This document shows positions 7,727 through 57,890 of a stretch of 64,000 bases of DNA, in pieces. The stretch is taken from assembly GCA_002269645.1 (NCBI GenBank), contig NIVC01001088.1:10019-74018 (forward strand), read 5' to 3'. How positions within the stretch are numbered: the first letter of the stretch is position 1; each line of letters opens with the position of its first letter. A program made the position numbers and the translations under genes. This stretch comes from Macrostomum lignano. Taxonomy: Eukaryota. The notes under the pieces were generated by a model that did not search any database, had not been told where the DNA came from, and worked only from the letters and a program-made list of their open reading frames with translations.

Positions 7727-7787
<61 letters not shown>

Positions 7788-7822
7788 TTCTGCCTGCCTG
7801 TCTGTTTTTCTGTCTGTCTGCC

Positions 7823-7867
<45 letters not shown>

Positions 7868-7880
7868 TTCTGCCTGCCTA

Positions 7881-7943
<63 letters not shown>

Positions 7944-7978
7944 TTCTGCCTGCCTGTCTGTTTTTCTGTCTGTCTGCC

Positions 7979-8027
<49 letters not shown>

Positions 8028-8062
8028 TTCTGCCTGCCTGTCTGTTTTTCTGTCTGTCTGCC

Positions 8063-8103
<41 letters not shown>

Positions 8104-8114
8104 TTCTGCCTGCC

Positions 8115-8187
<73 letters not shown>

Positions 8188-8222
8188 TTCTGCCTGCCTG
8201 TCTGTTTTTCTGTCTGTCTGCC

Positions 8223-8259
<37 letters not shown>

Positions 8260-17285: not shown

Positions 17286-18113
17286 ATGGACCAGCAGCAG
17301 CAGCAGCAGCAGCAGCAAGACTCTTCTGTTGTGTCAGATGGCGCCTCAGCCACCAGTCCGCAGCAGCCGCCAGTTACGGTGAAATGCGTGGCAGTTGGAG
17401 ATTCCTGCGTAGGCAAAACAGCCAGCCTAATCAGCTACACAACTAACGGCTTCCCCAATGCCTATACGCCAACCACATATGACACTTATTCTATTGATGT
17501 TCGCGTTGATCACCGCTGGTGCCGGGTGGCTCTGTGCGACACTCCCGGCTTGGACCATTTCGAGCAGATCCGCCCCTTAGCCTACCCGGACGCGCACGTG
17601 TTTCTGTTGTGCTTCGCAGTCGCCCAGCCGGAGTCGCTGGAGTCCTTGAAAGCCAAGTGGCTGCCGGAGCTGAATGAGCATGCTCCGGCGCACGCCGCTC
17701 GGCTGCTTATTGGTTTGAAATCCGATCAACGCGACGACGCGTCGATATTGTTAGACTTGTCGTTGAAGAATTCTGCACCGGTTAGTAAAGAGGAGGCCGA
17801 GAAGGCCTGCAGACAGCTTGGCGCACTGGAGTACATCGAGTGCAGCGCGCTGACTCAGAAATGTCTCAAAGAAGTGTTCGACACGGCCATCTGGGCCGGT
17901 TCGAGTGTTCAAGAAGCCCTGGCTACTGGGGCGGCGGCGTCCGGCAAGTCTGGCAAGTCGCGAGGCAAGAAATCCAAAAGCTCAAAGGTGAGCGACCAGA
18001 GCGGCTGCAAGTTGATGGCTAAAAGAGGCGCGGATGGCGCCAGGCAGCAGCAGCAGAAATCTTCCGGCTTGTTGCAACGACTTTTCTGCGTGGCCGATCA
18101 CTCCGCGAACTGA
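17286..18113 (+). CDS. Atypical Rho-family GTPase, RhoU/RhoV (Wrch/Chp)-like, 275 aa, single coding exon
   Basis: KCVAVGDSCVGKT, SYTTNGFP, YTPTTYD, LCDTPGLD, RPLAYPD..VFLLCF, KWLPE, Rho insert, YIECSALTQKCLKEVFDTAI. The SYTTNG, LCDT, SALTQK and FDxAI features, the N-terminal extension and the FCV-type non-CAAX end point to RhoU/V. Confidence 0.88.
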   Translation: MDQQQQQQQQQDSSVVSDGASATSPQQPPVTVKCVAVGDSCVGKTASLISYTTNGFPNAYTPTTYDTYSIDVRVDHRWCRVALCDTPGLDHFEQIRPLAYPDAHVFLLCFAVAQPESLESLKAKWLPELNEHAPAHAARLLIGLKSDQRDDASILLDLSLKNSAPVSKEEAEKACRQLGALEYIECSALTQKCLKEVFDTAIWAGSSVQEALATGAAASGKSGKSRGKKSKSSKVSDQSGCKLMAKRGADGARQQQQKSSGLLQRLFCVADHSAN

Positions 18114-34240: not shown

Positions 34241-35285
34241 GAACAGTAACATAGATTCTAGTAACTCGAGAGCTAAGTTCATATTAACAAAGTACTTCAA
34301 CAACAAAAAAAGATTAGCCACATTAGCAATAACAGAACCTCATTAGTTAGAAAATTTATGCTTCAATCGATAGCCATTGAGAAGGTACGCAATAGAAAAC
34401 AACTACCGCGGTCAGTAGGTGTTCAAACAGGACAATTTATTAATAAATTAACAGTCAAATAATCAGTATACTAGCGCGGCGCTCTCATGTACCAGCCGGC
34501 AGCGGCCCAGGCTCGATTCCAAGTGCAGTCACAGTATTTTTGGGGGCTAAATTGGGATCTCGGCTTGGCTCTGCTTTCGCAATTAATGCCAATTAGCTTG
34601 AGGGGCGTACATGTACGTATCCGCGCGCCTGTGTGCCTCAGGGGAGTCGGCGGAATGGGCAGTAACAATGTCTCTCGCCGATTGTGTGACAATGTCGCTT
34701 TAAGTGTTGCCAGGGTGCACGCAGCCCCGCAGTCTCTTTCATTCTCATTCGTAATCATTCTCAGTTGGGTCGGAAGTGATCCTCATTTTTTCTACTGATT
34801 GAACGTGCCATCAAAAACATGGCATCTGAGAGTGCACTTGACTGAACATCGGCAGTCAGCACTCGCTAGAGTAAGTGAAATCGGAATAGCGTATTATCCC
34901 ACAGAAGTATTTGTTTCAGCGTAATTCTTTTCAACGGCAACCCAAAATAGAACCATAATTTTTTCAAACGATTTTTGATTGTAGAAAGTAGATACTGTCA
35001 GTATAAAACAGAGCACACACTCATGTTGCACTACAGCTTTTTCGTTTTGTCATGAGTATAATTAATTTTTGGACACCCCTCGCTTGTACTAGCGTACTAG
35101 TATACCAATAGTACTGGTATAGTACTGGAGAAGTATACCAATAACTCGTATACCAATTGCGCGACGAACTTTAAACACCCAGTGGCCTACTGCTACTACA
35201 ATGGAGACTTGCCTCAGTCTCAACTCTCTTTCTTTTTTCTTCTTTAATAAGCTTGCAGTAATGCTAGAGAAACACGGATTCATTA
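34241..35285. repeat. Unclassified dispersed repeat; second, shorter copy at 40956-41185
   Basis: Shared blocks GAACAGTAACATA..AAGTTCATATTAACA, CATGAGTATAATTA.TTTTTGGACAC, GCGCGACGAACTTTAAACAC, GAGACTTGCCTCAGTCTCAACTCTCTTT and GAAACACGGAT occur in the same order in both copies. Confidence 0.75.
34475..34735 (+). mobile_element. Diverged copy of the tRNA-derived SINE at 54082
   Basis: Shares CCCAGGCTCGATTCCAAGTGCAGTCACA..TCTCGGCTTGGCTCTGCT and CGTATCCGCGCGC..CAGGGGAGTCGGCGGAATGGGCAGTAA..GCCAGGGTGCAC with the 54-kb copy. Confidence 0.8.
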
Positions 35286-36285: not shown

Positions 36286-39200
36286 CTTGACTTACTTGAC
36301 TTAGCTGCAGGGCTGTCCCGGGGGGACACAGAGGGAACCCGCGAGCGCCCATTCCGCTAATCCCTGAACGGCCGACGCGTCGCTATGAACGAAGGGTTGG
36401 CGCCGCCCAAGGAGGTCCCCCAGTGTCGCCAGCAGCTATAGTACTCTCTGCAGAAAGGAGAGTTCAGCCCTGTGTGTGGCCCGAGGTAAGTGAGTCTGGC
36501 TCGCGTAAAGGCGGGACAGATGCTGACGAAATGCTCAGCGGTTTCGTCACCTGAGTTACAGAAACTACAGATGGCGTTGGTGGCGTTGCCCTGCAGGTAC
36601 TTGTGCCTAGAGAAGCAGCCGTGACTTGAGAGGGTCATGGTGGCAGCCCGGATGTCTCTGCGCGAGAGGCGCAAGAGGAGCTTCCGGAGCTGGTGAGAGG
36701 GCTGAGGGACAGCGCCTCTGGATTGCCTGCAGGTAGTGCAGTTCGCCCAAGCCGAGCGGTGCTGGGTCCTGATCCACGCGTTGATGCGCGAGTCGATGAC
36801 ACAGCCAGGAATCGGGACAAGGGGTTCGGGACCGAGAGAGGAGCCGGAGGCGCCAACTTTTGCTAAGGCGTCAGCCAACTCATTCCCTCGGATCCCCACA
36901 TGCCCCGGAACCCACTTAAGGGTGATTTTGTTGGTGGAGCCCAACATGTTGAGGAGTTGGATACGAGGACTGTAGCAGAACTGGTACTACAGCCACTGAT
37001 GGCGTGCAAGGCAGCTTGGCTGTCCGAATGGAAAATGATGTTCTTACCGGATCCGCCAGTGGCGAGAAGCTCTGCAATGCAGGAGCTGATGGCGAGAACT
37101 TCACTTTGGAAGACACTGGAGTTGACCCCAGTGTACTGAGCGTGGGTTGCGATGACCCTCCCGTTCAGGAAGATTCCAACACCAAAGCCGGTGTTGGCTG
37201 ACTGCTTAGAACCATCGGTGTAGCAGTGAAGCTCCCCATGGTTCCAGTGGTCATTGAAGGTATCGCGCGAGTCGAAAGCTACGGAGTAGCGTTGTCTCAG
37301 GTTGAGCGTTGTTGAGGCAATGCCATCGGTGAAGACGCGATTGGCCTGACACTCGTTGAGAATGTTGAGGCACAGGTCGCTATGCGGGACGAAGTTCCGC
37401 TTAGCAGGTGCCCTCATGTAAAGGAATTTGATACCGGCATCAAGTAAACGCCGCGTCGTTCTAGCCGCCTCACCCCTGATGAAGAGGTCAAGAGGCGGAA
37501 GATTAAGGAAGGCCCCCATGCCGGCAAAGGGCGTGGACCTGGTGGCGTTGCAGATAAGCCTACACGCTCTGTCCTGGATCGTGTTGAGCAAATCTGCATC
37601 GCTTTTGACCTGGGTAGCGCAACCCAGACAACCGATGCAGGTACGTAATGGCAGGTCTAACTACGGAAGTGTAGATCCACCAAAGCCGCTTTGGAGAAAG
37701 ACCCCAAGAAGTGCCAAGTGCTCGTCGGAGCTGGGCCAGGATGACTGAGGCATGCTTGGCTTTTGCTTTCACGTGGAAGGACCAGTTGAGTCGGTGGTCA
37801 AGTATGACCCCGAGACATCTGGTCTGGTGCGCGAAGGCAATATCTCTGCCGTATAACTGCAGAGGTCGTATTCCAGCGTATTCTGCTGGTGAACATAATG
37901 GCAACAGTTTTGGGCTCAGAGAGTTCCAGACCGTTGTCATTGGCCCAGGATTCTGCTTTGCGGATAAAGCTCTGCATCAGATCCCTGAGCGTGCTGAGGG
38001 ACGGCTCTGCCACAATGGCAGTGACGTCGTCAGCATACCCGACTTTGAAGACGGGATCAGGTCGGGAGTCGCCCAGAAGAGCGTCCATGACCAGGTTCCA
38101 GAGCGTCGGGGTGAGGACTTCACCTTGGGGTCCGCCCTTACAAACTTTGGCGGAGGCAGTTTGCCAAAGAAGTTGGGCAGTGACCGTAAGGTTAGAGATC
38201 ATGTACATGATCCACCGTATGAGGGTAGCGTGAGCTTTGCGGTTTTTAAGGGCCCTCTGAAACCCTTTAAAGATAACGTTGTCGAAGGCGCCAACAATCT
38301 CGAGAAAAAGAGCCAGGGCGTAACCGTCATCCATTACCGCCCGTTCAATGTACTCGACTATCGCATGCAGGGCGCTGTCAGTCGACCTCCTGGTACGGAA
38401 GGCTTGCTAGTGATTGCTGAGGTGCACTGCTGTCAGCTCGCATGAAAGCAGCCGCCAGAGAATAGGCCTCTCAGTGAGCTTAAGTATTGCTGACGTTAAG
38501 CTAATTGGCCTAAAGGCCTTGACGCTCTGGTAGTCACCCTTCCCAGGTTTGAGAATGAAGACTACCCGAGCTTCGGTCCAGCACTTGGGAACGTATCCCA
38601 TCTGGATAGAGGCCCGCATGAGATAGCGGGTGAGTCTCAAGAACGAGGGTATCTTGGCTGCTTCACGAAGAACAGGGTAGATACCATCAGGTCCAAGAGA
38701 TTTGAAGGGCTTGAAGGTTCTGACCGCACGAGCGATTAAGTCTTCAGTGATAATGCCCGCCGCTAGGGTGGCTCCATCCATCGAACGGTTGGGTTCCGAT
38801 CTAGCAGTGGGTACCCTCAGGAAGAATGTGCTGAGCATATGCTGAAGCACTTCTTCAGGGTCTTTAGTGAGAGAGCTATCATCTCTTCTGATCATGGCTA
38901 ATTTGGACATTTTTTCCATTGTAAGGGCCTTGACAAGCCTAGAAGTAGGTCTGTCTTGATCCAACTCATTGCAGAATTGGCGCCATTTACATTCCTTGGC
39001 TTTGCGCACTTCAGATTTCAAGTTGTGGGAGGCTTGTCGGAAAAGTTCCATGTCCTCTGGGTTTCCGGTCTTCATGGTACGGCGTGAAGGCTTTTGGCCT
39101 TCCGCCTGAGTTTCCCCAGCTCCGGGTTCCACCACGGCGCCGAGGTCTTGTCTTTGTATAGGCACGGACAGGGCAGGCCGCTTCATAGGCTGCAATAATG

Positions 39201-40882
39201 CAACCTGTCAGCGTCTCAGCCGCATGGTCCACATCCTCGCAGGTCTCAATCGGACGTAATTCCGTGAGTTCCTGCAGGTGCAGATCAAGGGTAGCCTTAT
39301 AGACTGCCCAATCAGTGTTGCGAATGTTACGCCTCCAAGTGATCGAGGACTGGGGTTTAGTGTCCACGATGTTAAAGGCGATAAAGCAGTGGTCAGACAG
39401 GGAGGGCTCCTCAGACCAGACTTCACTTCTCAACTCTGTCAAAGAGTTTTGGGGTAGAGAATGTGGCATCGAGGGCCTCAGTCCATCTGCCATTGTGAAA
39501 GGTAGGAGCAGGCGAATAACGTCTGGTCCAGCTGCGGTGCTCTTTGCCGAGACAAAAACCACGTAGGGTATTGTCTTTGGACGCTGGCCTTCGCGAAGAA
39601 AAAGGGCTCCGCCGAGGTCAGCATCCAAGGAGACCGTCGGCAGCCGCTGGAGCAGCTGCTGAGCATCCTTATCACTGCTAGGAGCGATAAGAACGAATGT
39701 GCTTCGCAGCACCATCCGCTCAATGCCGATGGAGATTCCCTCCTCGACAGTCCGCTCAATCAGATGGGATTCAATAGCACTCCACACTTTTTGAAGCTGA
39801 TCAGTGGTCCAGTCCTGGTCGCGACCTCGAATGATCACTCCCGGGATTTTGGCCTTGGCCTTCGCCGCAAAGGTAGCTCCCGAAGGAACCTCCTTGTTGG
39901 CAGTGGCCATTTGTTGCGCCGTGGTTTCGGCCTCAGCAGCCGCGGCAGCAGCTCCAGGGAGCGCCGCTGAACTACTGGGGCTTCCACCGGCCGGCCCGTC
40001 TGGTTGCCTTGGGACGCCAGTCGCTTCAGCGTCCGTGGTGGACGCCGCCGCTTTGCCCCCCCGCAGCTTCCTTCTTGGCCTGCCTTTTGGCGCGTCGCTT
40101 AGCGCGTTTGCGCTCGAGCCGAGCCCGCTGAGCTTCATCGGATCTGCCAGATTTGGCCGGTCCTTTAGGCTCAGAGCCCGCGGTTCCCTTTGATCTACCA
40201 GCAGAGCTGGCAGGTCTTTGGGTGTTTTGGTTTTGGTAGCTCTTGTTGGATCTGGTTGGAAGGCCAGGGCGGTCCTTCGGACTGAGGTTGGGATTTAGAA
40301 GGGTCCCCGTCCCTAGAATTAGTTTGGTTATCCATAGTCGGCTCGAAGGCCATGATAAAGATTGATGGACTACCCTCGAAGGGGCGCGGTACCCACCCGG
40401 CCGCTCCAACTGACCGGGCAGTAGGCCAAAAGAACCCTCAAGGCTGGTCCGACACCAGGAGGGAGACCGCTTGCGACCGGACTACTCCCCGGCCTTCCAG
40501 CCCATCGGCACGGTCAAACACCTTAGGTATAGAGGGTATACGTTGAGCAGTACCACGGCCTGCGGACTGGCAAGCCAGACCCGCATACACAAGTTCGGCA
40601 AAAGCCACTGGATGGGTCCCCAGCGTCGGAAGCCCAGTCTGTCCGGCAGCCCTAGGGTCTGCCTTGAACACTCGCGGGGACGAGTACCCTGGGTCGGCTC
40701 GCAAAACAGTGTGAGGGGGGGGGGTCCGCGGCTGCCAGTGGCAAATAGAGAGTGCAGACCTCCCTCCAGCCTTGACCTGCTGAAGATAGGGGCAGGCGTG
40801 GAGCATCGCAGACCTTAGCCCATAGGCCTGGTCTGTCTCATACTTCACTGGCATGCTGAATACGCCCGTGCGAGCGAGGGCG
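36286..40882 (-). mobile_element. Non-LTR retrotransposon, LOA/R1-type with RNase H; both ends present, internally deleted and frameshifted
   Basis: ORF1-like basic/gag region at 40409-39500. APE remnant SEEPSLSDH. RT motifs SLGPDGIYP, FRPISLTS, FLEIVGAFDNV, GGPQGEVLTPTLWN, GYADDV. RNase H YTDGSK and WVPGHVGIRGNELADALAK. Zinc knuckle CSFCNSGDETAEHFVSIC. Tail (TAAGTCAAG)2. 16-bp direct repeat AGGGCGAGGGCGAGGG at 36270-36285 and 40883-40898. Confidence 0.92.
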
Positions 40883-41639
40883 AGGGCGAGGGCGAGGGAA
40901 ACTGCTGACAAAGGGGGCGCCTAACACCAAACTAGCGGATCACTACATTAGTCTTGAACAGTAACATATTCTACTATAACCCGAAAGCTAAAGTTCATAT
41001 TAACAGAGTTCTCAGTCTTCATGAGTATAATTACTTTTTGGACACGGCCCTCGCAATTGTAGCACCGGCGCGACGAACTTTAAACACGTCGCAGTGGCCC
41101 GCTACAATTGAGACTTGCCTCAGTCTCAACTCTCTTTTCTTATTCTCTAATAATAACGTACCAGGCTATGGAAACACGGATCTAAGAGAACAATTTTAAG
41201 AAGCAGACAGAGACTGCAGACAGAGCACAGAGCAGAGGCTGAAGGATGTCTGTCATCTTGAGTTTTATTTATTTCTTATCTGTGATGCTACTCTATTATA
41301 ACTAAAACGTCGAGATCAAAAAAACTATCTTCGTCCTTTAAATATGAATAAAAAATTCTATTCTTAGAACTTCGTCATTTTTTCGATTCCGTAGCATCCG
41401 CATGCAGAATGGGTATAATTGCAAGACGAGGCGGCAGAAAAATGTGTGTAAAACTGCTGAGAAAGAAGCTGCGCTTTTACCTTTGAGACATCGGACTTCG
41501 TGAGTTTTATTTCTGTTCAGATGAGCAATTACAGGGATCAAGCATATTATGCATCATTATAGGGCCTAAGTGTATCAATCCCCCTATTCATTGATAGTGC
41601 CCTCCCCCCAGTATAGTGTGCCTCACTCGAGAACACGAG

Positions 41640-43020
41640 GACATTGCCCTCTTTAGTGTCTCCAAAACAGTGCCCCACTCGAGGACAGTGCCCCCAAGGA
41701 CACCCACCGAGGACAGTGACCCCCCGAGGACAGTGCCCCCCCGAGGACAGTAGTCCCCAGGATAGTGCCCCCCAGGATAGTGTCTCCAAAGACAGTGCCC
41801 CACTCGAGGACAGTGCCCCCCCCGAGGACAGTAGCCCCCAGGATAGTGTCTCCAAAACAGTGCCCCACTCGAGGACAGTGCCCCCAAGGACACCCCCGAG
41901 GACAGTGCCCCCGAGGACAGTAGTCCCCAGGATAGTGCCCCCCAGGATAGTGTCTCCAAAGACAGTGCCCCACTCGAGGACAGTGCCCCCGAGGACACCC
42001 CCCGAGGACAGTGCCCCCCCGAGGACAGTAGTCCCCAGGATAGTGTCTCCAAAGACAGTGCCCCCCTCGAGGACAGTGCCCCCGAGGACACCCCCGAGGA
42101 CAGTGCCCCCCGAGGACAGTGCCCCCCGAGGACAGTGCCCCCCCCGAGGACAGTAGTCCCCAGGACAGTGCCCCCCAGGATAGTGTCTCCAAAGACAGTG
42201 CCCCCGAGGATCCCCGAGGACAGTGCCTCCCCCCCCGAGGACAGTGCCCTCCCCCGAGGACAGTAGTCCCCAGGATAGTGCCCCCCCCAGGATAGTGTCT
42301 CCAAAGACAGTGGCTCCCCCCCCGAGGATAGTGGCTCCAGAATAGTACCGCCCAGGACAGTGCCACCCCCCCCTACGAGGACAGTGCCCCCGAGGACAGT
42401 GCCCCCCGAGGACAGTGCCTCCCGAGGACAGTGCCCCCGAGGACAGTGCCCCCCGAGGACAGTGCCCCCGAGGACAGTGCCCCCCCCCGAGGACAGTGCC
42501 CCCGAGCACAGTGCCCCCCGAGGACAGTGCCCCCGAGGACAGTGCCCCCGAGGACAGTGCCCCCCGAGGACAGAGCCCCCCGAGGACAGTAGTCCCCAGG
42601 ATAGTGCCCCCAGGATATTGTCTCCAAAGACAGTGCCCCCGAGGACACCCCCGAGGACAGTGCCCCCCCGAGGACAGTGCCCTCCCCCCGAGGACAGTAG
42701 TCCCCAGGATAGTGCCCCCCAGGATAGTGCCCCCAGGATAGTGTCTCCAAAGACAGTGCCCCCGAGGACACCCCCGAGGACAGTGCCACCCCCCCCCGAG
42801 GACAGTGCCCCCGAGGACAGTGCCCCCGAGGACAGTGGCCCCCCGAAGACAGTGCCCTCGGAATAGTTCCCCCCCCCAAAATACTGTAGTATTTCTAAAG
42901 ACAGTGGCTCCCCCCCCGAGGACAGTGGCTCCAGGATAGTACCGCCCAGGACAGTGCCCCCTCCCCCCGAGGACACCGCCCTTGAGGACAGCGCCCCCGA
43001 TGACGGTGCCTCAGGATAGT
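41640..43020. repeat. GC-rich 15-17-bp minisatellite GAGGACAGTGCCCCCC with GGATAGTGTCTCCAAA sub-blocks
   Basis: Visible directly; accounts for the GGTVLG/HCPRG ORFs. Confidence 0.94.
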
Positions 43021-43274
43021 GCTGCCTAATTAAACCTCGGAGATTGCATCGCGAAATTGGCGCTTTACTCGTACACGAGCCAAGCCATCTTGCTCGGATG
43101 GCCAGCTTCCTTTCAGAGCGTCTTTTAGAAGCAGACAAAAATATAAAAATCCACTGAAGTCCAACACACTTGTCTTTTCTATAGAAAAATGTAATTTTCT
43201 CGTTTATCTACTAATAATAACCCAAAAATAACGCCTTCTCAATACCAGGTTAAAGAAGAATAAGAAGAGCAAAG

Positions 43275-46200
43275 ATGGTGCTGGTTTGGTAAGCATTTTA
43301 TTACATTTTTGGAGCCTACAGGCAGTACAGTTCTCCATTGAGAACAGTTACCCATTGAGAACAGTTCCCATTGAGAACAGTTCCCATTGGGAACAGTTCC
43401 CCTACAGTTTTCCATTGAGAACAGCTTTCTATTAATGACAGTTCCCATTGAGAACAGTTCCCAATGAGAACAGTTCCCATTGAGAACAGTTCCCATTGGG
43501 AACAGTTCCCCTACAGTTTTGCATTGAGAACAGCTTTCTATTAATGACAGTTCCCATTGAGAACAGTTCCCATTGAGAACAGTTCCCATTGAGGACAGTT
43601 ACCCATTGAGGAGAGTTACCCATTGAGGACAGTTACCCATTGAGGACAGTTACCCATTGAGTAAAGTTCCTCATTGAGTACAGTTCCCCATTGAGTAAAG
43701 TTCCTCATTGAGTACAGTCCCCATTGTGGACAGTTCCCCATTGAGTACATGCAGTTTTCCAGGGAGAACAGTTCCTACATGTAATTTCTGATTTGTGAGC
43801 TGAATATGGCGCATCGGGATCAAACTTTCTTACAGGTTCCTGTTGGTTCTAATCCAAACATCTGGAAATCTTGCCGTTAACAGTTGCCAAAATGGAGGTA
43901 CATTCGATTATAGCACTTTCAGATGCTTCTGCACCACTGAGTTCTATGGGGAGAGTTGTGAGTCATCCTACATTGACAACGATCCGTGCTCAGATACCAG
44001 CATACCGGAGATTGCCGATTCAACGGGCTCTCATGGACCAGCCAGAACTCAGTCCTGCACAGAAACGGGTACTTGCTTTGACTTCTCCAAAATTTCAACC
44101 GGATGGTATAGGATTAACTCTCCGGCCGGGAATGCACTGACAAGCAGGTGTCCGGATACAACAAGCACCTGTGGAAGCTCCGCGCCATTCATCGTCACAA
44201 ACATCGTCCAAGAACAGAACGCCAACAGGCAACTCTATTCTGCTAAACTGTCTAAGATAGTTAGGTCCGGGCCCAACTGTTACGATTCCAGTGGCGACAA
44301 CTATCCGGTGAAAATCCTGGAATGTGGATCGTACAAACTTTACTACCTAAGACCGACAAGCTACGCTGAGCATCACTACTGCATTGGAGACAGGAAAGTG
44401 TGCGCAACTGGGTTCGTTTCAGCAGATGGCAGCGGCTACGAGCCGTGTCACGATGCCACTTCCTGCTTGCCGACGTTGAAACCTGAAGCTGCTACGTCAC
44501 CAATTCTACGACAAGTCAGAATCAATTTAAACCAATACAATTACCACAGTTACTTCAACTGCTCGTTTCAGAACGTATTTCAAGCTCCGAGCAACTTCAC
44601 GCTGGGACTTCGATACAGAGTAACTTACCGGCTGACATTTCACAATGGTACAAAAATCGATATCCCAGACTGCACGGCTGCCGATTTGAACATTGCATCG
44701 AATTCAAATGAAACAACCACAGTGTCCTGCAGGCACGACAAATTTCTTAGACCGCATTCTAACATCTACGGTGGAACGCTGGAATGCGTGCTGCAAGCGA
44801 AGTGCAACTCGGCAACCTCGAATTACATTTCCCAAGAGCTTAGCTCCGTACCGCACAGATTTGAGTTCCTATACAACCTGGTTGATCCCGACACCAATGC
44901 AACCACGTCCGTGATAACGCCTTCCAAGCCTATTCAAATATGCATTAATGTTTCGAAAGTGCCGACAGCCAGTGTAGGAAACGAGGGCGGCATTAAGTTT
45001 CGAATTACAACGCGCCGAAAAGCTCTAATTTTGAAGGACAAAATCACTATTAAGGTCAACTCGTCGATAGGAAACGAGACAGCAACTCCTTGTTCGGTAG
45101 AGTTTCCTCCTATGTTTATCGGTGCAACAAGAGCTTGCACAACGCTGACACTGATGAACGAGGACGACGATGGCTTGATTGTTGCCGGTCTCACCGAATC
45201 CCAGTGGACTTCTCAGATCGAAGTGAATGTCAGTTACTCTTCAATGGCATTAAAAGGAGTTTACACTGGAAATCGATGGGTGAAAATTCAGTCGCGCAAG
45301 CTAACCATTGATCTGAGTCCGCTATACGGGGTCGAACGCAAGGACTATTTGCACGTTTATTATGACCCCTATATCAAGCCGGCGAACTTGGATTCAGCAT
45401 ATGGATCTTTCATTTCCGGCGACCAATGCAGAGTACTGTCTTTGCTGCGACACAGTACTCTGCCATACGAAGTACAAGCGAAGGAGTGCGTCCAGAATTC
45501 GAGAAATTCATTCGCGTCGTTTGTCACTCAGTTGGCTTTAAGATACGAGAATTACGTAATTCAAACATACAGCGTAGGTGGTACATTTGCTTATACAACA
45601 AGGAAAGCAGCAGCAACTAGTGTACTGCCGCTGACTGATGACGATGTTCCCTGGGGAGTAACGATTGAAAAAGCCAAAACTGGAGTGCGGCTGAAGCTTG
45701 ACCTGTATGGCACAATAATTTACACCTGGGGCTTTCGCACCGGATCTCGAGGCTGCGCACACACCTTTATTCAGAGTCGAAAATCAATGCTTGAATTCGA
45801 TGCTACGCGGTGCTCTTCTTCACGTGCTACAACGGCTGGGTTCGATGCACTGGATACCATGGTAATCCCTGGGTTCTACGATACTCCTAGCAGAGTGGAG
45901 GGTCTCATGTACAAACCTAATGCAGCATCGTGGACAGTATCTGACACCATTGCCTTGGAAAGCACTAGAGATATGTTCTCAAACAACTTTGTACCAGATT
46001 CAGTTCCAGAGAGTCTTTTGAAGCCAGTTCAGACGCTAAATTTTTGCTCCTGCTACGACGGTGACGAATACAAACCGTTAGACCTGGCTGGTAGGTGTGT
46101 TATCAAACAAAATAAAACGATAAGCTACTCAAGAAAAAAGCGGTCAGTTCCTCGTCCTGGTCCCATCCTCTGGCAAAAAATCGCAAGAGCAGCCAGACAG

Positions 46201-46735
46201 TCAGCTCAGAGCAGCAGCACCGATACAGTTACAGCGGACAAGGCGACGCAGCACTGCAACGACCGTATTAGACAAAAGAGGCAAGATCGTCACCGAGTGT
46301 TCAAAGGCAACCGGCATCATTGGATCTATGGATTTTATATCTAAATTCAAGACTGTTTGCAGTCAATACGCTATCCAGCTAAATTCATTCAACTTGACCG
46401 AGTCTCTGTTCAACTCTTTCGCTGGCGAATGCGTCAGGAGTCTCAGCTACAACGTGTCGATTGTGCTAAACAGCAAAGCCAGCAGCATCATCCAAGACCT
46501 GGAGGCTGAGATCTGTCCCAATGGCTGCTCAGGCTATGGAATCTGCCTCTCTGGAGCTTGCCAGTGTACCGGAGGTTATTCAGGAGATGACTGCCGCGAA
46601 CTTACAGTCCAGACTGGCGAAACTGGTGGAAATAATCCTACGGACGGCGCCGGGGCCATCATTACATCATTAGCGGCTTTGATTGTAGCGCTATTCTTCG
46701 TAGCCACAAGTTGCAAAATAACTCCGATTTATTAA
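43275..46735 (+). CDS. VWDE-like secreted or GPI-anchored protein (signal peptide, EGF, uromodulin-type Cys-rich domain, VWD-like, RKKR site, EGF, hydrophobic tail). Exons 43275-43288 and 43836-46735, with a +1 frameshift near 46270
   Basis: Micro-exon ATGGTGCTGGTTTG|gtaagc joins ttacag|G in phase to give signal peptide MVLVWFLLVLIQTSG. EGF CQNGG..CFCTTEFYGESC; DPC..GWYR..CGSSAP; YYDPY at the GDPH position; CPNGCSGYGICLSGACQCTGGYSGDDC; terminal hydrophobic stretch. The two ORFs 43843-46344 and 46328-46735 overlap in different frames. Confidence 0.7.
43325..43790. repeat. 16/17-bp minisatellite CCCATTGAGAACAGTT in VWDE-like intron 1
   Basis: Visible directly. Confidence 0.92.
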
Positions 46736-48589: not shown

Positions 48590-50560
48590 GGTAGGAGTGG
48601 CAACCCATCTAGAGGAGTGGCAGCCCATCTAGAAGAGTGACAACCCATCTAGGATCGTGACAACCCATCTAGGATCGTGACAACCCATCTAGAAGAGTGA
48701 CAACCCATCTAGAAGAGTGACAACCCATCAAGGATCGTGACAATCCATCTAGAAGAGTGACAACCCATCTAGGATCGTGAAACCCATCAAGAAGAGTGAC
48801 AACCCATCTAGAAGAGTGACAACCCATCTAGAAGAGTGACAACCCATCTAGAAGAGTGACAACCCATCTAAAAGAGTAACAACCCATCTAGAGGAGTGGC
48901 AGCCCATCTAGAAGAGTGACAACCCATCTAGGATCGTGACAACCCATCTAGGATCGTGACAACCCATCAAGAAGAGTGACAACCCATCTAGAAGAGTGAC
49001 AACCCATCTAGGATCGTGACAATCCATCTAGAAGAGTGACAACCCATCTAGGATCGTGAAACCCATCAAGAAGAGTGACAACCCATCTAGAAGAGTGACA
49101 ACCCATCTAGGATCGTGACAATCCATCTAGAAGAGTGACAACCCATCTAGGATCGTGAAACCCATCAAGAAGAGTGACAACCCATCTAGAAGAGTGACAA
49201 CCCATCTAGAAGAGTGACAACCCATCTAGAAGAGTGACAACCCATCTAAAAGAGTAACAACCCATCTTGAAGAGTGGCAGCCCATTTAGAAGAGTGGTAA
49301 CCCATTTAGAAGAGTGACAACTCATTTAAAAGAGTGAAAACCCATTTAGAAAAGTGACAACCCATCTAGAAAAGTGACAACCCATCTAGAAGAGTGATAA
49401 CCCATCTAGAAGAGTGACAACCAATCTGGAAGAGTGACAACCCATCTAGAAGAGTGACAACCCATCTAGGATCGTGACAACCCATCTAGGATCGTGACAA
49501 CCCATCTAGAAGAGTGACAATCCATCTAGAAGAGTGACAACCCATCTAGGATCGTGACAATCCATCTAGAAGAGTGACAACCCATCTAGGATCGTGAAAC
49601 CCATCAAGAAGAGTGACAACCCATCTAGAAGAGTGACAACCCATCTAAAAGAGTAACAACCCATCTTGAAGAGTGGCAGCCCATTTAGAAGAGTGGTAAC
49701 CCATTTAGAAGAGTGACAACTCATTTAAAAGAGTGAAAACCCATTTAGAAAAGTGACAACCCATCTAGAAAAGTGACAACCCATCTAGAAGAGTGATAAC
49801 CCATCTAGAAGAGTGACAACCAATCTGGAAGAGTGACAACCCATCTAGAAGAGTGACAACCCATCTAGAAGATGACAACCCATCTAGAAGAGTGACTACC
49901 CATCTAGAAGAGTTACAACCCATCTTGAAGAGTGACAACGCATTTAAAAGAGTGAAAACCCATTTAGAAAAGTGACAAACCATCTAGAAAAGTGACAACC
50001 CATCTAGAAGAGTGATAACCTATCTAGAAGAGTGACAACCAATCTGGAAGAGTGACAACCCATCTAGAAGAGTGACAACCCATCTTGAAGAGTGACAACG
50101 CATTTAAAAGAGTGAAAACCCATTTAGAAAAGTGACAAACCATCTAGAAAAGTGACAACCCATCTAGAAGAGTGATAACCTATCTAGAAGAGTGACAACC
50201 AATCTGGAAGAGTGACAACCCATCTAGAAGAGTGACAACCCATCTAGAAGAGTGACAACCCATCTAGAAGAGTGACAACCCATCTAGGATCGTGAAACCC
50301 ATCAAGAAGAGTGACAACCCATCTAGAAGAGTGACAACCCATCAAGAAGAGTGACAACCCATCTAGAAGAGAGACAACCCATCTAAAAGAGTAACAACCC
50401 ATCTTGAAGAGTGGCAGCCCATTTAGAAGAGTGGTAACCCATTTAGAAGAGTGGCAACCCATCTATAACAGTGGCAACCCATTGAAAGAGGTCAAAACCA
50501 ATCTAGAGGAGTGGCAATCCATCTTAATGAGAGACAACCCATCTAGAAGAAGCAGCCCAT
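48590..50560. repeat. 20-bp minisatellite, array 1: GAAGAGTGACAACCCATCTA
   Basis: About 98 units with internal block duplications. Confidence 0.96.
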
Positions 50561-50904: not shown

Positions 50905-51510
50905 AAAGCTTAGGATTGGCAGCCCATCGGAAGGAGTGGAAACCCATCGGAAGGAGTGGAAACCCATCGGAAGGAGTGGAAACCCATCGGAAGGAGTGGA
51001 AACCCATCGGAAGGAGTGGCAACCCATCCAGAAGAGTGGCAACCCATCCAGAAGAGTGGCAACCCATCCAGAAGAGTGGCAACCCATCCAGAAGAGTGGC
51101 AACCCATCCAGAAGAGTGGCAACCCATCCAGAAGAGTGGCAACTCACCCGGAAGAGTGGCAACTCACCCGGAAGAGTGGCAACTCACCCGGAAGAGTGGC
51201 AACCCATCCAGAAGAGTGGCAACCCATCCAGAAGAGTGGCAACCCATCCAGAAGAGTGGCAACCCATCCAGAAGAGTCGCAACTCATCCGGAAGAGTGGC
51301 AACCCATCCAGAAGAGTGGCAACCCATCCGGAAGAGTGGCAACCCATCCAGAAGAGTGGCAACCCATCCAGAAGAGTGGCAACCCATCCAGAAGAGTGGC
51401 AACCCATCCAGAAGAGTGGCAACCCATCCAGAAGAGTGGCAGCCAATCCAGAAGAGTGGCAGCCAATCCAGAAGAGTGGCAACCCATCCAGAAGAGTGGC
51501 AGCCCAACCC
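50905..51510. repeat. 20-bp minisatellite, array 2: GAAGAGTGGCAACCCATCCA
   Basis: About 30 units. Confidence 0.96.
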
Positions 51511-54081: not shown

Positions 54082-54438
54082 GGGGGGCCGTAGCCCAGCG
54101 GTAGCGCAGCTGCTCTGGTGTGCCAGCGACCCAGGCTCGATTCCAAGTGCAGTCACATTAATTTGGGGCTGAATTGGAATCTCGGCTTGGCTCTGCTCGT
54201 GCAATTAACGGCCTTGAGAGCCAACCCCCCAAGGCGCATTGAAGTGTACATGCCTAACGATAATATAAAGTTAGGGCCGCTGTACACTCCTGTGTGAGTG
54301 TGTGCCTGCGTACGTATCCGCGCGCTTGTATGCCTGCTCAGGGGAGTCGGCGGAATGGGCAGTAATGCCTCTCGCCGGTTGTGTGCCTATGTCGCTTAAA
54401 GTGCGCCAGGGTGCACACAACCCCCCTGCCTCTAAAAA
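54082..54438 (+). mobile_element. Complete tRNA-derived SINE with A tail and 13-bp TSD
   Basis: A-box TAGCCCAGCGG (54091) and B-box-like GGCTCGATTCC (54134). TSD AAACGCGTACGCA at 54069-54081 and 54439-54451. Short A-run at the 3' end. Second copy at 34475. Confidence 0.88.
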
Positions 54439-54953
54439 AAACGCGTACGCACATGATAAAAATTTGCAAGTCATATTTGATGAGCACGAGATGAATGTAC
54501 ATAGCTCAATGTACGTAACTTTTCCTGCTTTCTACTTTTATACAAATCCACAAAGTCTCTACCTAACCTCTAACTCTGATATTTCCCCCGGTTTAAAGCT
54601 ACTAACAGCTGTATAGTGTAATTTCGGCAAAACTGCTGTCGCAAATTTTCATATTGTGAAGTAGTGGATAGATGCATAAATATATCTTTATTGCATTCAT
54701 TGTCTATGGTTTGAACTTGAACTTTTCAAAAAAAGTACTCAACAAAAATACTATATAATGTTTTATGGTCTACCGAGCCTCACTGTTTATTTTGTCTATG
54801 GTCAAAAGTAGGCGCACAAATATAGGCCTATGGTTACGGCTGCTTGAGTCTGTGTAGCCACTAAAAGAGAAAGCAGCCATCTAGAAGTGAATTCGGCAAT
54901 TTGACTCAGTTTTTTTTGCACAAGGAGCAGCCCGCCTTAAGCCTTCGCCGGAA

Positions 54954-55385
54954 ATGTTCAATAACGCTTGCAGCGCTGACTGGCAACAGCAGCAGCAGCA
55001 ACAGGATCTGGTCAGCGTGAACTGGAAAGACTGCATCCACCGTTGGAAGCGAAGCCGCGAAAAGTGGCGCTCCGAGGCCCTGCGCCTGCAGAAGCAGCTC
55101 TGCGACATGACTCGCAGCGCCAACCATTGGCGCCAACAGACCGGCATAGTGCAGGCCGAATTAGCAAAAGCGAGAGGCGCCCTAATCGGCTGGCGCACAG
55201 AGGCGCTGAGAACGCGCGAACTGGTGCGCCAGTGGAAAGCGGAAGCCATCAGATGGCGGGAGCAGGCGCGCGAATGGAAACGACGCTGCTGCGAGCTGAT
55301 GGATCAGCGAGACGATCAACAGATTGCGCAACTATGCCACGACAGGTACAGCTGCGGCTACAGCCGCTGCGGCGACTACTGCTGA
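54954..55385 (+). CDS. Orphan 143-aa coiled-coil protein with Trp at every seventh-register position
   Basis: GC-rich, non-repetitive ORF with ATG and stop, set in AT-rich flanks. All 9 Trp are in one heptad position and small or hydrophobic residues occupy the +4 position. No family recognised. Confidence 0.68.
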   Translation: MFNNACSADWQQQQQQQDLVSVNWKDCIHRWKRSREKWRSEALRLQKQLCDMTRSANHWRQQTGIVQAELAKARGALIGWRTEALRTRELVRQWKAEAIRWREQAREWKRRCCELMDQRDDQQIAQLCHDRYSCGYSRCGDYC

Positions 55386-55784: not shown

Positions 55785-57160
55785 TTAAGAAGTGGCAACC
55801 CATCAGGAGGAGTAAAAACCCATCGAAAGGAGCGATAGCCCATCGGGAGGAGCGATAAACCACCGGGAGGAGCGATAACCCACCGGGAGGAGCGATAACC
55901 CACCGGGAGGAGCGATAACCCACCGGGAGGAGCGATAACCCACCGGGAGGAGCGATAAACCACCGGGAGGAACGATAACCCATCGGTAGGAGTGACAACC
56001 CATCGGGAGGAGTGACAACCCATCGGGAGGAATGATAACCCATCGGGAGGAGCGATAACCCATCGGGAGGAGTGACAACCCATCAGGAGGAACGATAACC
56101 CATCGGGAGGAACGATAACCCATCGGGAGGAGCGATAACCCATCGGGAGGAGCGATAACCCATCGGGAGGAGCGATAACCCATTGGGAGGAGCGATAACC
56201 CATCGGGAGGAGCGATAACCCATCGGGAGGAACGATAACCCATCGGGAGGAGCGATAACCCATCGGGAGGAGCGATAACCCATCGGGAGGAGTGACAACC
56301 CATCGGGAAGAGTGACAACCCATCGGGAGGAACGATAACCCATCGGGAGGAGCGATAACCCATCGGGAGGAGTGACAACCCATCGGAGGAGTGACAACCC
56401 ATCGGGAGGAGCGATAACCCATCGGGAGGAGTGACAACCCATCGGGAGGAGTGACAACCCATCGGGAGGAGAGACAACCCATCGGGAGGAGTGACAACCC
56501 ATCGGGAGGAGAGACAACCCATCGGGAAGAGTGACAACCCATCGGGAGGAACGATAACCCATCGGGAGGAGCGATAACCCATCGGGAGGAGTGACAACCC
56601 ATCGGGAGGAGTGACAACCCATCGGGAGGAGTGACAACCCATCGGGAGGAGTGACAACCCATCGGGAGGAGTGACAACCCATCGGGAGGAGTGACAACCC
56701 ATCGGGAGGAACGATAACCCATCGGGAGGAGCGATAACCCATCGGGAGGAGTGACAACCCATCGGGAGGAGTGACAACCCATCGGGAGGAGTGACAACCC
56801 ATCGGGAGGAGTGACAACCCATCGGGAGGAGTGACAACCCATCGGGAGGAGTGACAACCCATCGGGAGGAGTGACAACCCATCGGGAGGAGTGACAACCC
56901 ATCGGGAGGAGTGACAACCCATCGGGAGGAGTGACAACCCATCGGGAGGAGTGACAACCCATCGGGAGGAGTGACAACCCATCGGGAGGAGTGACAACCC
57001 ATCGGGAGGAGAGACAACCCATCGGGAGGAGTGACAACCCATCGGGAGGAGTGACAACCCATCGGAGGAGTGACAACCCATCGGGAGGAGTGACAACCCA
57101 TCGGGAGGAGTGACAACCCATCGGGAGGAGTGACAACCCATCTAGAGGAGTGGCAAATGG
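55785..57160. repeat. 20-bp minisatellite, array 3: GGGAGGAGTGACAACCCATC / GGGAGGAGCGATAACCCATC
   Basis: About 68 units. Confidence 0.96.
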
Positions 57161-57624
57161 AGTTTTACTCCATCAGGAGTGTCAAAATAATATAGGAATT
57201 GGTATAGTCTCACTTGTTAATTTATACAGTGCTGAAGGGTCAGAGGTATATAATTTATCAGTAAAATAAACTGAACCGCTTGTACATGTAGCTTGAGTTA
57301 TAACATTTCACAAAGCGTGTATGATTTTTAGTAGTTTGTCATATTTCCATTTTAAAGAACAATTACATGCACGAGGAAGACAGCCGAGTGCAGACATCGT
57401 CAAGTGCGATTTCACAGTACTGCTCTTTCTTTGCTAGCGTATATTTAATTTGTCCGAATAAAGTAATCTCAATACGTCGTAAGTAAAGGTAGGCAGATAC
57501 AGGGGTCGGCAAACTCCGGCCCGCTAAAATTTGAAATTTCATCATGCGAGTTGCAAACTGGCTTGCTCAAGGTTTGTGATTCTTCTCAGCGCTCTCTCTC
57601 TAATCTCCTATCTTCTCTTAAATC

Positions 57625-57890
57625 TCCTCTCCTCTCCCCTCCTCTCCTCTCCTCTGCTCTGCTCTCGTCCTCTCCTTTCCTCCTCTCTGCTCTCCTCTCC
57701 TCTCCTCTCCTCTCCTCTCCTCTCCTCTCCTCTCCTCTCCTCTCCTCTCCTCTCCTCTCCTCTCCTCTCCTCTCCTCTCCTCTCCTCTCCTCTCATCTGC
57801 TCTCCTCTCCTCTCATCTGCTCTCCTCTCCTCTCCTCTCCTCTGCTCTCCTCTGCTCTTCCCCCTCAACCTTTCCTCTCTTCCCTCTTCT
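57625..57890. repeat. (CTCCT)n microsatellite
   Basis: Visible directly. Confidence 0.95.

What the first reader, a model, noticed from the sequence alone, without database searches (positions are those of the whole stretch)
54954..55385. Orphan protein with a natural tryptophan-zipper heptad
Seen: Trp at residues 10, 24, 31, 38, 59, 80, 94, 101 and 108, all congruent to 3 mod 7. The gaps in that register are Q17, L45, M52, V66, A73, T87 and L115. The +4 register is mostly small or hydrophobic (I28, A42, L49, A56, L70, L77, A84, V91, A98, A105, C112). The motif W-[KR]-x-[EQ]-A recurs, but the DNA is not a tandem repeat, so the period is maintained at protein level. The tail is Cys/Tyr-rich (CHDRYSCGYSRCGDYC). 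Established: engineered Trp-zipper coiled coils form higher-order (pentameric) bundles, and Trp is rare in natural coiled-coil cores. Inference: a novel oligomeric fibre or tube-forming structural protein, possibly cross-linked via the tail.
Basis: partly seen in the sequence, partly recalled or inferred. Interest (0 to 1): 0.7.

Follow-up and report, generated by a model that had tools for sequence, protein, structure and literature searches.

The report
Flatworm orphan protein with tryptophan-striped helix
This is a real, selectively maintained small gene of the flatworm Macrostomum lignano, one of five paralogues, encoding a single long helix with tryptophan every seventh residue; it is an unusual natural coiled-coil design, but its function is still unknown.

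Summary
The ORF at 54954..55385 (+) encodes 143 aa, and all nine Trp fall in one heptad register (chance about 3e-8). There is no DNA repeat underneath.

The window is Macrostomum lignano. The gene has four nucleotide-identical copies in collinear duplicated segments and four older dispersed intronless paralogues. No relative was found outside this species among 1.84 billion representative proteins.

Across the paralogues pN is 0.27 against pS 0.70. A 106-residue block has no indels, and eight of eight Trp columns are invariant against 31% of the other columns. AlphaFold2 gives one continuous helix (residues 24-136, pLDDT about 98).

The register is canonical: Trp/Leu at d, Ala/Leu at a, Lys/Arg at e, Glu/Gln at g. 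That favours a parallel homo-oligomeric coiled coil whose Trp layers are offset by Ala layers.

Natural analogues exist. The phage T7 gp17 fibre rod has aromatic plus small heptads and is a trimer. The acetylcholinesterase WAT domain has a WWW helix that wraps a polyproline peptide. Neither match is significant, so these are resemblances, not membership.

The engineered pentamer needs Trp at both a and d, and the Cys/Tyr tail is poorly conserved.

The parts
54954..55385 (+). Complete intronless CDS of 143 aa plus the TGA stop; member P0001 of a five-paralogue Macrostomum lignano family
   Evidence: The ORF is nucleotide-identical in four assembly copies, L001-L004. pN is 0.27 against pS 0.70 versus the paralogues.
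54984..55004 (+). Poly-Gln run (residues 11-17) in the variable N-terminal segment; the paralogues differ here by indels
55020..55070 (+). Most conserved block, N-WKDCIHR-WKRSREK-WR (residues 23-39). It holds the first WWW triplet and seven basic residues. In all five paralogues 14 of its 17 residues are invariant (I28, R33 and E36 vary).
55023..55361 (+). Predicted single continuous alpha-helix (residues 24-136). The heptad register is unbroken: d = W/L/M, a = A/L, e = K/R, g = E/Q.
   Evidence: AlphaFold2 gives pLDDT of about 98 over residues 31-110.
55215..55292 (+). Second WWW triplet, RELVRQ-WKAEAIR-WREQARE-WKRRCC (residues 88-113). It resembles the AChE WAT helix and ends in the invariant core Cys112.
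   Evidence: for the WAT resemblance; for conservation.
55335..55382 (+). Cys/Tyr-rich tail CHDRYSCGYSRCGDYC (residues 128-143); poorly conserved among the paralogues
54794..54801 (+). GTCTATGG motif 160 nt upstream of the ATG, with a second copy at 54702-54709. A copy lies 144-190 nt upstream of three other paralogues, and P0003 has inverted pairs further upstream. It may be a shared promoter element or part of an interspersed repeat; this is tentative.

Best explanation
The ORF is a genuine protein-coding gene restricted to the Macrostomum lineage.

Its product has no signal peptide or hydrophobic segment. It is basic (pI about 9.3) and consists essentially of one helix of about 110 residues, roughly 16 nm long, with an unbroken heptad register.

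Trp occupies eight of the fourteen d positions, and Leu, Met, Val, Ala or Thr occupy the other six. The adjacent a positions are mostly Ala where d is Trp and Leu where it is not. Position e is Lys/Arg and position g is Glu/Gln.

I infer that the helices associate in parallel and in register into a homo-oligomer, or a hetero-oligomer of paralogues. A trimer or tetramer is most likely. In this picture:
- Trp indoles in the d layers fill the space left by the Ala a layers.
- g-to-e' Glu/Gln to Lys/Arg pairs set the orientation.
- The invariant core Cys112 (an a position) and the C-terminal cysteines come close enough to allow covalent or metal cross-links.
- The near-invariant, strongly basic N-terminal WWW block (residues 23-39), conserved even at solvent-facing positions, is the likely docking site for a partner.

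Shown: the gene is real, it is under selection, it is predicted as a single helix, and the heptad pattern is present and conserved.
Inferred: orientation, oligomer number, cross-linking, and an intracellular scaffold role.
For: - Register statistics: (2.9e-8).
- Family and taxonomic restriction. Only four paralogues were found, all M. lignano, among 1.84 billion representative proteins searched exhaustively.
- Purifying selection: one search gives pN 0.27 against pS 0.70 and dN/dS of about 0.17. The ORF is 100% identical in four copies whose flanks are 96-99% identical.
- Eight of eight Trp columns are invariant against 31% of other columns, and there are no indels over 106 residues.
- A small residue follows Trp at +4 in 29 of 40 cases, against 10 of 35 after a non-Trp d residue.
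- AlphaFold2 predicts a single helix over residues 24-136.
- Paralogue gene models (BOX15_Mlig013763g1 and others) come from an annotation built from RNA-seq transcript assemblies (PMC5730564).
- The profile search against PDB sequences puts the T7 gp17 fibre rod first. Its heptads are F171, F178, F185, W199, F206, F213 and Y220, with A, S or T at +4. That rod is described as a triple-helical coiled coil (bioRxiv 10.1101/2025.10.22.683886).
Against: - No multimer prediction or experiment was possible, so orientation and stoichiometry rest on heptad rules.
- From general coiled-coil host-guest studies (my recollection, not checked here), Trp is a poor core residue in two-stranded coiled coils.
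- Arg35 is an invariant residue at an a position, which is unusual for a core.
- The conservation of surface positions in residues 23-39 suggests that partner binding matters at least as much as self-assembly.
- No expression pattern or localisation was found.
- dS is saturated, so the absolute dN/dS value is rough.
- The +4 small-residue count pools non-independent paralogues.
Confidence: 0.55

Rival explanations
1. WAT-like clamp. Each WWW triplet (residues 24-38 and 94-108) would work like the tryptophan amphiphilic tetramerisation helix of cholinesterases. Four parallel helices would wrap an antiparallel polyproline-II peptide of an unidentified proline-rich partner, with the Trp stacking on prolines and terminal Cys forming disulfides to the partner.
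For: - The best PDB match of residues 88-122 is 1VZJ (the WAT/PRAD complex), E 0.056, with 11 of 24 residues identical including RQWKAE.
- Pfam AChE_tetra matches two stretches in two members.
- hhalign gives probability 50%.
- With the Trp fixed, the remaining residues match WAT better than shuffles do: p of 3e-4 for P0001, 7e-4 for P0002 and 7e-3 for P0006.
- Cys near the C-terminus is a feature of the t-peptide (PMC1285061), and this family also has it.
Against: - The matches are below significance. Pfam scores 11.6 bits against a cut-off of 25.
- There is no cholinesterase domain.
- WAT carries seven aromatic residues, with F, M and F at +4 filling the helix-helix contacts. Here +4 is Ala, which suits a closed core.
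- The Leu/Leu heptads between the triplets would close any central channel.
- No proline-rich gene is conserved next to the paralogues.
- The protein lacks a signal peptide, whereas WAT/PRAD assembly is secretory.
Confidence: 0.15
2. Nucleic-acid-binding or other ligand-binding basic helix. The W-[KR] stripe would be a binding face (indole stacking plus Arg/Lys contacts), for example in sperm chromatin or RNA packaging. The helix could be a single alpha-helix rod or a bZIP-like basic region followed by a zipper.
For: - Net charge is about +9, pI is 9.1-10.6 in four of five paralogues, and residues 23-39 hold seven basic residues and are nearly invariant at all heptad positions.
- The protein is Cys- and Arg-rich with no signal peptide.
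- AlphaFold2 also predicts single alpha-helix domains as one long helix.
Against: - A continuous a/d hydrophobic seam with period 3.5 is not a feature of single alpha-helix domains.
- There is no bZIP or other DNA-binding Pfam hit.
- The bZIP N-x7-R signature is absent by inspection.
- P0006 is neutral (pI 7.15).
Confidence: 0.12
3. Antiparallel dimer or tetramer. Trp at d of one helix would pack against Ala at a of the partner by steric matching, helped by the near-symmetric placement of the two WWW triplets around residue 66.
For: - Positions 24, 31, 38 and 94, 101, 108 are mirror-symmetric about residue 66.
- Pairing i + j = 136 puts W24, W31, W38, W80 and W94 opposite C112, A105, A98, A56 and A42. 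This is my own inspection of the table.
Against: - e is almost all Lys/Arg and g is Glu/Gln. Antiparallel packing would juxtapose e with e' and g with g', giving like-charge repulsion, whereas parallel packing gives g-e' attraction.
- There is no conserved helix breaker for a hairpin.
Confidence: 0.1
4. One reading: a pentameric or higher Trp-zipper bundle that forms fibres or tubes and is cross-linked through the Cys/Tyr tail.
For: - The engineered Trp-zipper forms a pentamer (Liu et al. 2004, PDB 1T8Z, cited in PMC4619341).
- The helix is long and the protein is Cys-rich.
Against: - Trp is only at d and alternates with Ala. The core volume per heptad is therefore close to Leu/Leu rather than Trp/Trp.
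- The tail is the least conserved segment, and a stop codon precedes it in P0003.
- With no signal peptide, extracellular disulfide cross-linking is unlikely.
Confidence: 0.06
5. Spurious ORF, a transposon-derived ORF, or a relic of a DNA repeat.
For: - The gene sits in a gene-poor stretch with no other called gene within 10 kb either side of it in the duplicate loci.
- 20-bp minisatellites flank it.
- There are no Pfam domains.
Against: - pN is far below pS across five dispersed paralogues.
- A 106-residue indel-free block is conserved.
- The copies lie in more than 20 kb of collinear duplicated segments, not in a mobile unit.
- There is no DNA repeat in the ORF.
- The paralogues are annotated from transcripts.
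Confidence: 0.02

Closest known systems
Proximal rod of the bacteriophage T7 tail fibre gp17 (triple-helical coiled coil; PDB sequences 7BOZ, 7EY7 and others)
   Same: It has a heptad stripe of aromatic residues (F171, F178, F185, W199, F206, F213, Y220). Each is followed by Lys/Arg, then x, then Glu/Gln-like, then a small residue (A, S or T) at +4. This is the same [aromatic]-[KR]-x-[EQ]-[small] motif as W-[KR]-x-[EQ]-A here. It is the top hit of the family profile against PDB sequences.
   Different: E is 0.054, so there is no demonstrable homology, and the two come from a phage and a flatworm. The aromatic residue is mostly Phe rather than Trp. The rod is part of a 553-aa fibre protein with globular ends. 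According to the preprint read, the rod itself has not been resolved experimentally.
WAT (tryptophan amphiphilic tetramerisation) domain of acetylcholinesterase and butyrylcholinesterase, Pfam PF08674, PDB 1VZJ
   Same: It has three Trp at exact heptad spacing on an amphiphilic helix. The local sequence RQWKAE..RW......WK is shared. There is Cys near the C-terminus. The helices are parallel and form a left-handed superhelix.
   Different: WAT is a 40-residue C-terminal appendage of a secreted enzyme and needs a polyproline partner (PRAD) in the centre. It has four further aromatic residues. Here the protein is free-standing and has two triplets plus two single Trp over 15 heptads, Ala at +4, and no signal peptide. 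Scores are below the family threshold.
Engineered tryptophan-zipper pentamer (Liu et al. 2004, PDB 1T8Z)
   Same: Trp sits in coiled-coil core positions on a heptad repeat.
   Different: By my recollection, the designed peptide has Trp at every a and d position. Here Trp is at d only (eight of fourteen), with Ala or Leu at a. The pentameric state therefore cannot be carried over.

Membership tests
Canonical left-handed alpha-helical coiled coil | A long alpha-helix with an uninterrupted heptad (a-g) pattern and apolar a and d positions | tested here: met
   AlphaFold2 gives a helix over residues 24-136. Hydrophobicity periodicity peaks at 3.5 and 7. d is W/L/M/V and a is A/L/I/V in all five paralogues, with no indel over 106 residues.
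Canonical left-handed alpha-helical coiled coil | Charged e and g positions able to form interhelical pairs | tested here: met
   e is K/R in 10 of 14 heptads and g is E/Q in 8 of 14.
Canonical left-handed alpha-helical coiled coil | Actual oligomerisation of two or more helices | not testable with these tools
   Only monomer AlphaFold2 was available. The Foldseek search with the single-helix model gave no matches.
AChE_tetra / WAT domain (PF08674) | Score at or above the Pfam gathering threshold (25 bits) | tested here: not met
   The score is 11.6 bits with E 0.24. phmmer against 1VZJ gives E 0.056. hhalign gives probability 50%.
AChE_tetra / WAT domain (PF08674) | Three equally spaced (i, i+7, i+14) Trp on an amphiphilic helix | tested here: met
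   W24/31/38 and W94/101/108 are invariant in all paralogues.
AChE_tetra / WAT domain (PF08674) | Location at the C-terminus of a cholinesterase catalytic domain (the T subunit) | tested here: not met
   The protein is a stand-alone 143 aa with an in-frame stop 66 nt upstream and no hydrolase domain.
AChE_tetra / WAT domain (PF08674) | [quoted passage not shown] | tested here: inconclusive
   Only Trp is aromatic within the triplet regions, and +4 is A, I or C rather than F or M. C-terminal Cys are present but at variable positions: -1 and -5 in P0001, -1 in P0002, and -4 and -5 in P0006.
AChE_tetra / WAT domain (PF08674) | Assembly of four helices around a polyproline-II PRAD peptide | not testable with these tools
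   No partner was identified. The neighbours of the paralogues are unrelated to one another.
Engineered Trp-zipper pentamer (1T8Z) | Trp at both a and d core positions | tested here: not met
   The a positions are A, L, I, V, R, T and C, and never Trp.
bZIP transcription factors | A basic-region signature next to a Leu zipper, with a Pfam bZIP hit | tested here: not met
   There is no bZIP family among the Pfam hits at E up to 10.
Transposon or viral ORF | Lies inside a mobile unit or matches transposon or viral protein families | tested here: not met
   The four copies lie in more than 20 kb of collinear segments that are 94-99% identical. The paralogues sit among ordinary host genes such as IFRD, arrestin, dynamin and Aldedh. 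There is no Pfam hit.

The most novel reading that the evidence does not exclude
The family may be a natural Trp-core assembly of a kind not yet seen. One version is a free-standing, double-ended WAT-like clamp that captures polyproline-II segments of partner proteins at both ends of a 16-nm rod. The other is a higher-order Trp/Ala bundle with its own packing rules. Either way it would have arisen de novo in the Macrostomum lineage, converging on motifs used by cholinesterase tails and phage fibres.
Probability: 0.2. Interest if true: 0.75.

Novelty: new variant of a known kind. Interest (0 to 1): 0.5.

Why it matters
Trp is the rarest residue and is uncommon in natural coiled-coil cores. Here a natural protein keeps eight Trp at one core position over about 15 heptads, and all eight are invariant through paralogue divergence that has saturated synonymous sites. 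That would give protein designers and coiled-coil specialists a natural template for aromatic/small core packing. It would also provide a built-in fluorescence reporter, and it tests whether the WAT-type Trp-proline clamp exists outside cholinesterases. For flatworm biology it is one more lineage-restricted family, with candidate shared upstream elements, that could be tested by RNAi and transgenesis in M. lignano. It does not bear on a long-standing open question, and its function is still unknown.

Tried and rejected
- Pfam scans of the protein and of the family gave only sub-threshold coiled-coil families and AChE_tetra.
- phmmer and hmmsearch against PDB sequences gave no significant hit. 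The best were a designed helical repeat protein, 1VZJ and T7 gp17, all at E of about 0.01-0.06.
- Foldseek of the AlphaFold2 model against PDB gave no matches, as expected for a single helix.
- The exhaustive HMMER search of 1.84 billion representatives returned only the paralogues plus one generic coiled-coil false positive, P0005, which has no Trp stripe.
- tblastn of the family against the window and all fetched loci found no extra copies.
- I looked for a conserved neighbouring or partner gene. Two 145-aa neighbours in L005 and L008 turned out to be unrelated.
- I looked for expression data by searching the Mlig gene ids in full texts and in the supplements of four M. lignano papers. Nothing was found, and one table was truncated in storage.
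- The flanks of the paralogues are not alignable, so no retrocopy hallmarks or shared UTRs could be read apart from the GTCTATGG motif.
- I considered and rejected a minisatellite-encoded proline-rich partner. The downstream array has a 20-bp unit, which is not a multiple of 3, and it is open in several frames only because of its composition.
- Dvir et al. 2004 (the WAT/PRAD structure paper) is not held in the library. Its content is cited through PMC1285061 and bioRxiv 431288.

Full report
**1. The observation**

The ORF at window 54954..55385 (+) is as described. It runs from ATG to TGA and encodes 143 aa. An in-frame stop lies 66 nt upstream.

All nine Trp (residues 10, 24, 31, 38, 59, 80, 94, 101, 108) fall at position 3 mod 7. 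The exact probability for nine residues placed at random in 143 positions is 2.9e-8. None of 400,000 random placements achieved it for period 7.

The ORF is a GC-rich island (60% against 46% for the window). Tandem Repeats Finder finds no array inside it. blastn and blastp self-comparisons find no internal repeat. The Cys/Tyr-rich tail is residues 128-143.

**2. Organism, copies and family**

The protein is 100% identical to genes on four contigs of the Macrostomum lignano Mlig_3_7 assembly, GCA_002269645.1. Those loci are collinear with the window over more than 20 kb at 94-99.6% identity. They are duplicated segments or haplotigs of this neopolyploid genome, not copies of a mobile element. 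Across the four copies the 432-nt ORF has no difference at all, while the adjacent 1 kb and 0.4 kb flanks differ by up to 4%.

Four older paralogues exist, all in M. lignano, all intronless, and all at unrelated loci among ordinary host genes:
- P0002, BOX15_Mlig013763g1, 136 aa.
- P0003, Mlig005078g1, 118 aa. A stop replaces the Glu codon at position 119, but the downstream frame still reads the conserved LMDRKDD.QI block.
- P0006, Mlig033729g1, 156 aa.
- P0004, Mlig033173g2. It is annotated as 70 aa because of a frameshift, and the remainder is intact in another frame.

An exhaustive HMMER search of 1.84 billion representative proteins with the family profile returned only these plus one generic coiled-coil false positive. 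The family is an orphan at detectable similarity.

**3. Is it a real gene?**

Pairwise Nei-Gojobori estimates between the three compared paralogue lineages give pS of 0.69-0.71, which is saturated, and pN of 0.27-0.29. That corresponds to dN/dS of about 0.17.

A 106-residue block starting at NWKDC aligns in all five paralogues without a single indel. All eight Trp columns in it are invariant, against 31% of the other columns. Under independence that has a probability of about 8e-5.

The GenBank models named BOX15_Mlig... come from the Mlig_RNA_3_7_DV1 annotation. That annotation was built from RNA-seq transcript assemblies and TransDecoder ORFs (PMC5730564), so the paralogues have transcript support.

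I could not find expression patterns. The gene ids occur neither in searchable full texts nor in the held supplements of four M. lignano papers.

**4. Anatomy**

AlphaFold2 with the five-sequence alignment predicts one uninterrupted helix over residues 24-136, with pLDDT of about 98 over residues 31-110. It adds a short N-terminal helix over the poly-Gln run, and the ends are disordered.

With Trp assigned to d, the register is canonical:
- d = W W W L M W V A W T W W W L
- a = I R A L A T L L A V A A C
- e is K/R in 10 of 14 heptads
- g is E/Q in 8 of 14 heptads

The pattern is the same in every paralogue.

Where d is Trp, the following a residue is usually small. Pooled over paralogues this is 29 of 40 cases, against 10 of 35 after a non-Trp d residue. 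The paralogues are not independent, so this is a trend and not a formal test. By my own arithmetic from standard residue volumes, a Trp plus Ala heptad and a Leu plus Leu heptad have similar core volume.

The Trp are arranged as a triplet (24, 31, 38), two singles (59, 80) and a second triplet (94, 101, 108).

Residues 23-39 (NWKDCIHRWKRSREKWR) are the most conserved stretch, including at solvent-facing positions, and contain seven basic residues. Cys27 (a g position) and Cys112 (an a position) are invariant. Cys6 is invariant in the four paralogues that align there.

By contrast the tail after residue 128 is poorly conserved. There is no N-terminal hydrophobic segment, so no signal peptide by inspection. 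pI is 9.1-10.6 in four paralogues and 7.15 in P0006.

**5. How it most likely works**

The a/d seam, the e/g charges and the single long helix point to a coiled coil. Basic e and acidic or amide g positions favour a parallel, in-register arrangement through g-e' attraction. An antiparallel arrangement would put like charges opposite each other.

Trp at d alternating with Ala at a suggests a closed core. The indoles would occupy the room left by the Ala layers.

The closest natural design found by the profile search is the proximal rod of the T7 tail fibre gp17. Its aligned segment reads F171, F178, F185, (N192), W199, F206, F213, Y220. The +4 residues are A175, A182, S189, T196, T203, A210, A217 and A224, and the flanking pattern is the same [KR]-x-[EQ]. 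That rod is described as a triple-helical coiled coil (bioRxiv 10.1101/2025.10.22.683886).

I therefore favour a parallel trimer, or possibly a tetramer, forming a rod of about 16 nm. In an in-register parallel bundle the invariant Cys112 residues would face each other in one a layer. With the C-terminal Cys they could give covalent or metal cross-links. The invariant basic WWW block looks like a partner-binding site.

All of this section is inference from heptad rules and analogy. No multimer prediction was possible with the tools.

**6. The WAT resemblance**

The second triplet resembles the tryptophan amphiphilic tetramerisation helix of acetylcholinesterase:
- ELVRQWKAEAIRWREQAREWKRRC (this protein)
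- EAERQWKAEFHRWSSYMVHWKNQF (WAT)

That is 11 of 24 identical, and 1VZJ is the best PDB hit for this segment at E 0.056. Pfam AChE_tetra scores 11.6 bits against a cut-off of 25. hhalign gives probability 50%.

With the three Trp held fixed, shuffling the other residues reaches the observed BLOSUM score with p of 3e-4 (P0001), 7e-4 (P0002) and 7e-3 (P0006). The first triplet is not significant.

In WAT, four parallel helices wrap an antiparallel polyproline-II peptide. The WWW motif stacks on the prolines, and a Cys at -4 makes disulfides.

This gives an attractive rival mechanism: a double-ended polyproline clamp. Four things argue against it:
- The +4 residues are Ala rather than the F, M and F of WAT.
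- The Leu/Leu heptads between the triplets would close a central channel.
- There is no signal peptide.
- There is no cholinesterase domain.

Membership of PF08674 fails on score and on architecture. The claim that it works like WAT remains open, at roughly 15%.

**7.

The orphan status, the protein-level heptad and the idea of an oligomeric helix are supported. The specific step from the engineered Trp-zipper pentamer (PDB 1T8Z, cited in PMC4619341) to a pentamer, tube or fibre is not supported. By my recollection that peptide has Trp at both a and d, whereas here Trp is only at d.

It is fair to say that Trp is rare in natural cores. But natural aromatic heptad stripes exist, in WAT and in T7 gp17. 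Cross-linking through the tail is doubtful because the tail is the least conserved part and one paralogue has a stop before it.

None of these is met.

**8. Novelty and score**

This is a new, lineage-restricted family whose fold class (coiled coil) is known but whose core composition is unusual and strongly conserved. I class it as a new variant of a known kind.

It is a good candidate for structural work and for protein design, and it can be tested in a tractable flatworm model. With no functional or expression evidence, and with partial natural precedents, I score interest at 0.5.

Noticed in passing
window 54794-54801 and 54702-54709 (+); L005 9811; L011 9855; L010 9857 (-); L008 8989, 9008, 9636 and 9656: An 8-mer, GTCTATGG, often in the context TTTT-GTCTATGG-YYRAAA, lies 144-252 nt upstream of the ATG in four of the five paralogue lineages. 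P0003 instead has two inverted pairs, at -345/-365 and -993/-1012, which look like the ends of a small repeat element. The flanks are otherwise unalignable. The window has 5 matches against 1.7 expected. This could be a shared promoter element or a piece of an interspersed repeat.
   Followed up: partly
window 48595-50550, 50917-51506 and 55791-57156: Three minisatellite arrays have related 20-bp units (GTGACAACCCATC...) in 98, 30 and 68 copies. They are strongly A-rich and T-poor on the + strand and open in several reading frames on the minus strand, giving spurious ORFs of 350-509 aa. They are conserved in position in the duplicate loci L001-L004.
   Followed up: partly
window 57623-57858: A (TCTCC)n microsatellite of about 47 copies with extreme GC and AT skew.
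   Followed up: no
L008 and L009 10355-10453 (P0003 locus); L011 about 10195-10210 (P0004 locus): Two paralogues are disrupted in the assembly. P0003 has an in-frame stop at codon 119, with the conserved tail still readable after it, in both copies. P0004 has a frameshift after residue 66-70, with the rest of the protein intact in another frame. These may be young pseudogenes, shortened isoforms or assembly errors.
   Followed up: partly
window 54954-55385 compared with L001 and L002: The ORF is 100% nucleotide-identical in all four copies, although the flanks of L001 and L002 differ by 1-4%. That means there are no synonymous differences either, which suggests gene conversion or constraint beyond the protein sequence.
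   Followed up: partly
window 17286-18110 (+) and 7389-8528 (+): An ORF with a full Ras-family GTPase domain (E 2e-36) and an ORF fragment matching transcription factor Tfb2 (E 5e-8). These are ordinary host genes elsewhere in the window. Several other long ORFs (43843-46341, 41588-43135 and 39011-40135) have no Pfam match.
   Followed up: no
window 54125-54425 compared with 34500-34728: A short interspersed repeat, two pieces of about 90-120 bp at 86-89% identity, is shared between the region upstream of the gene and a site 20 kb away.
   Followed up: no
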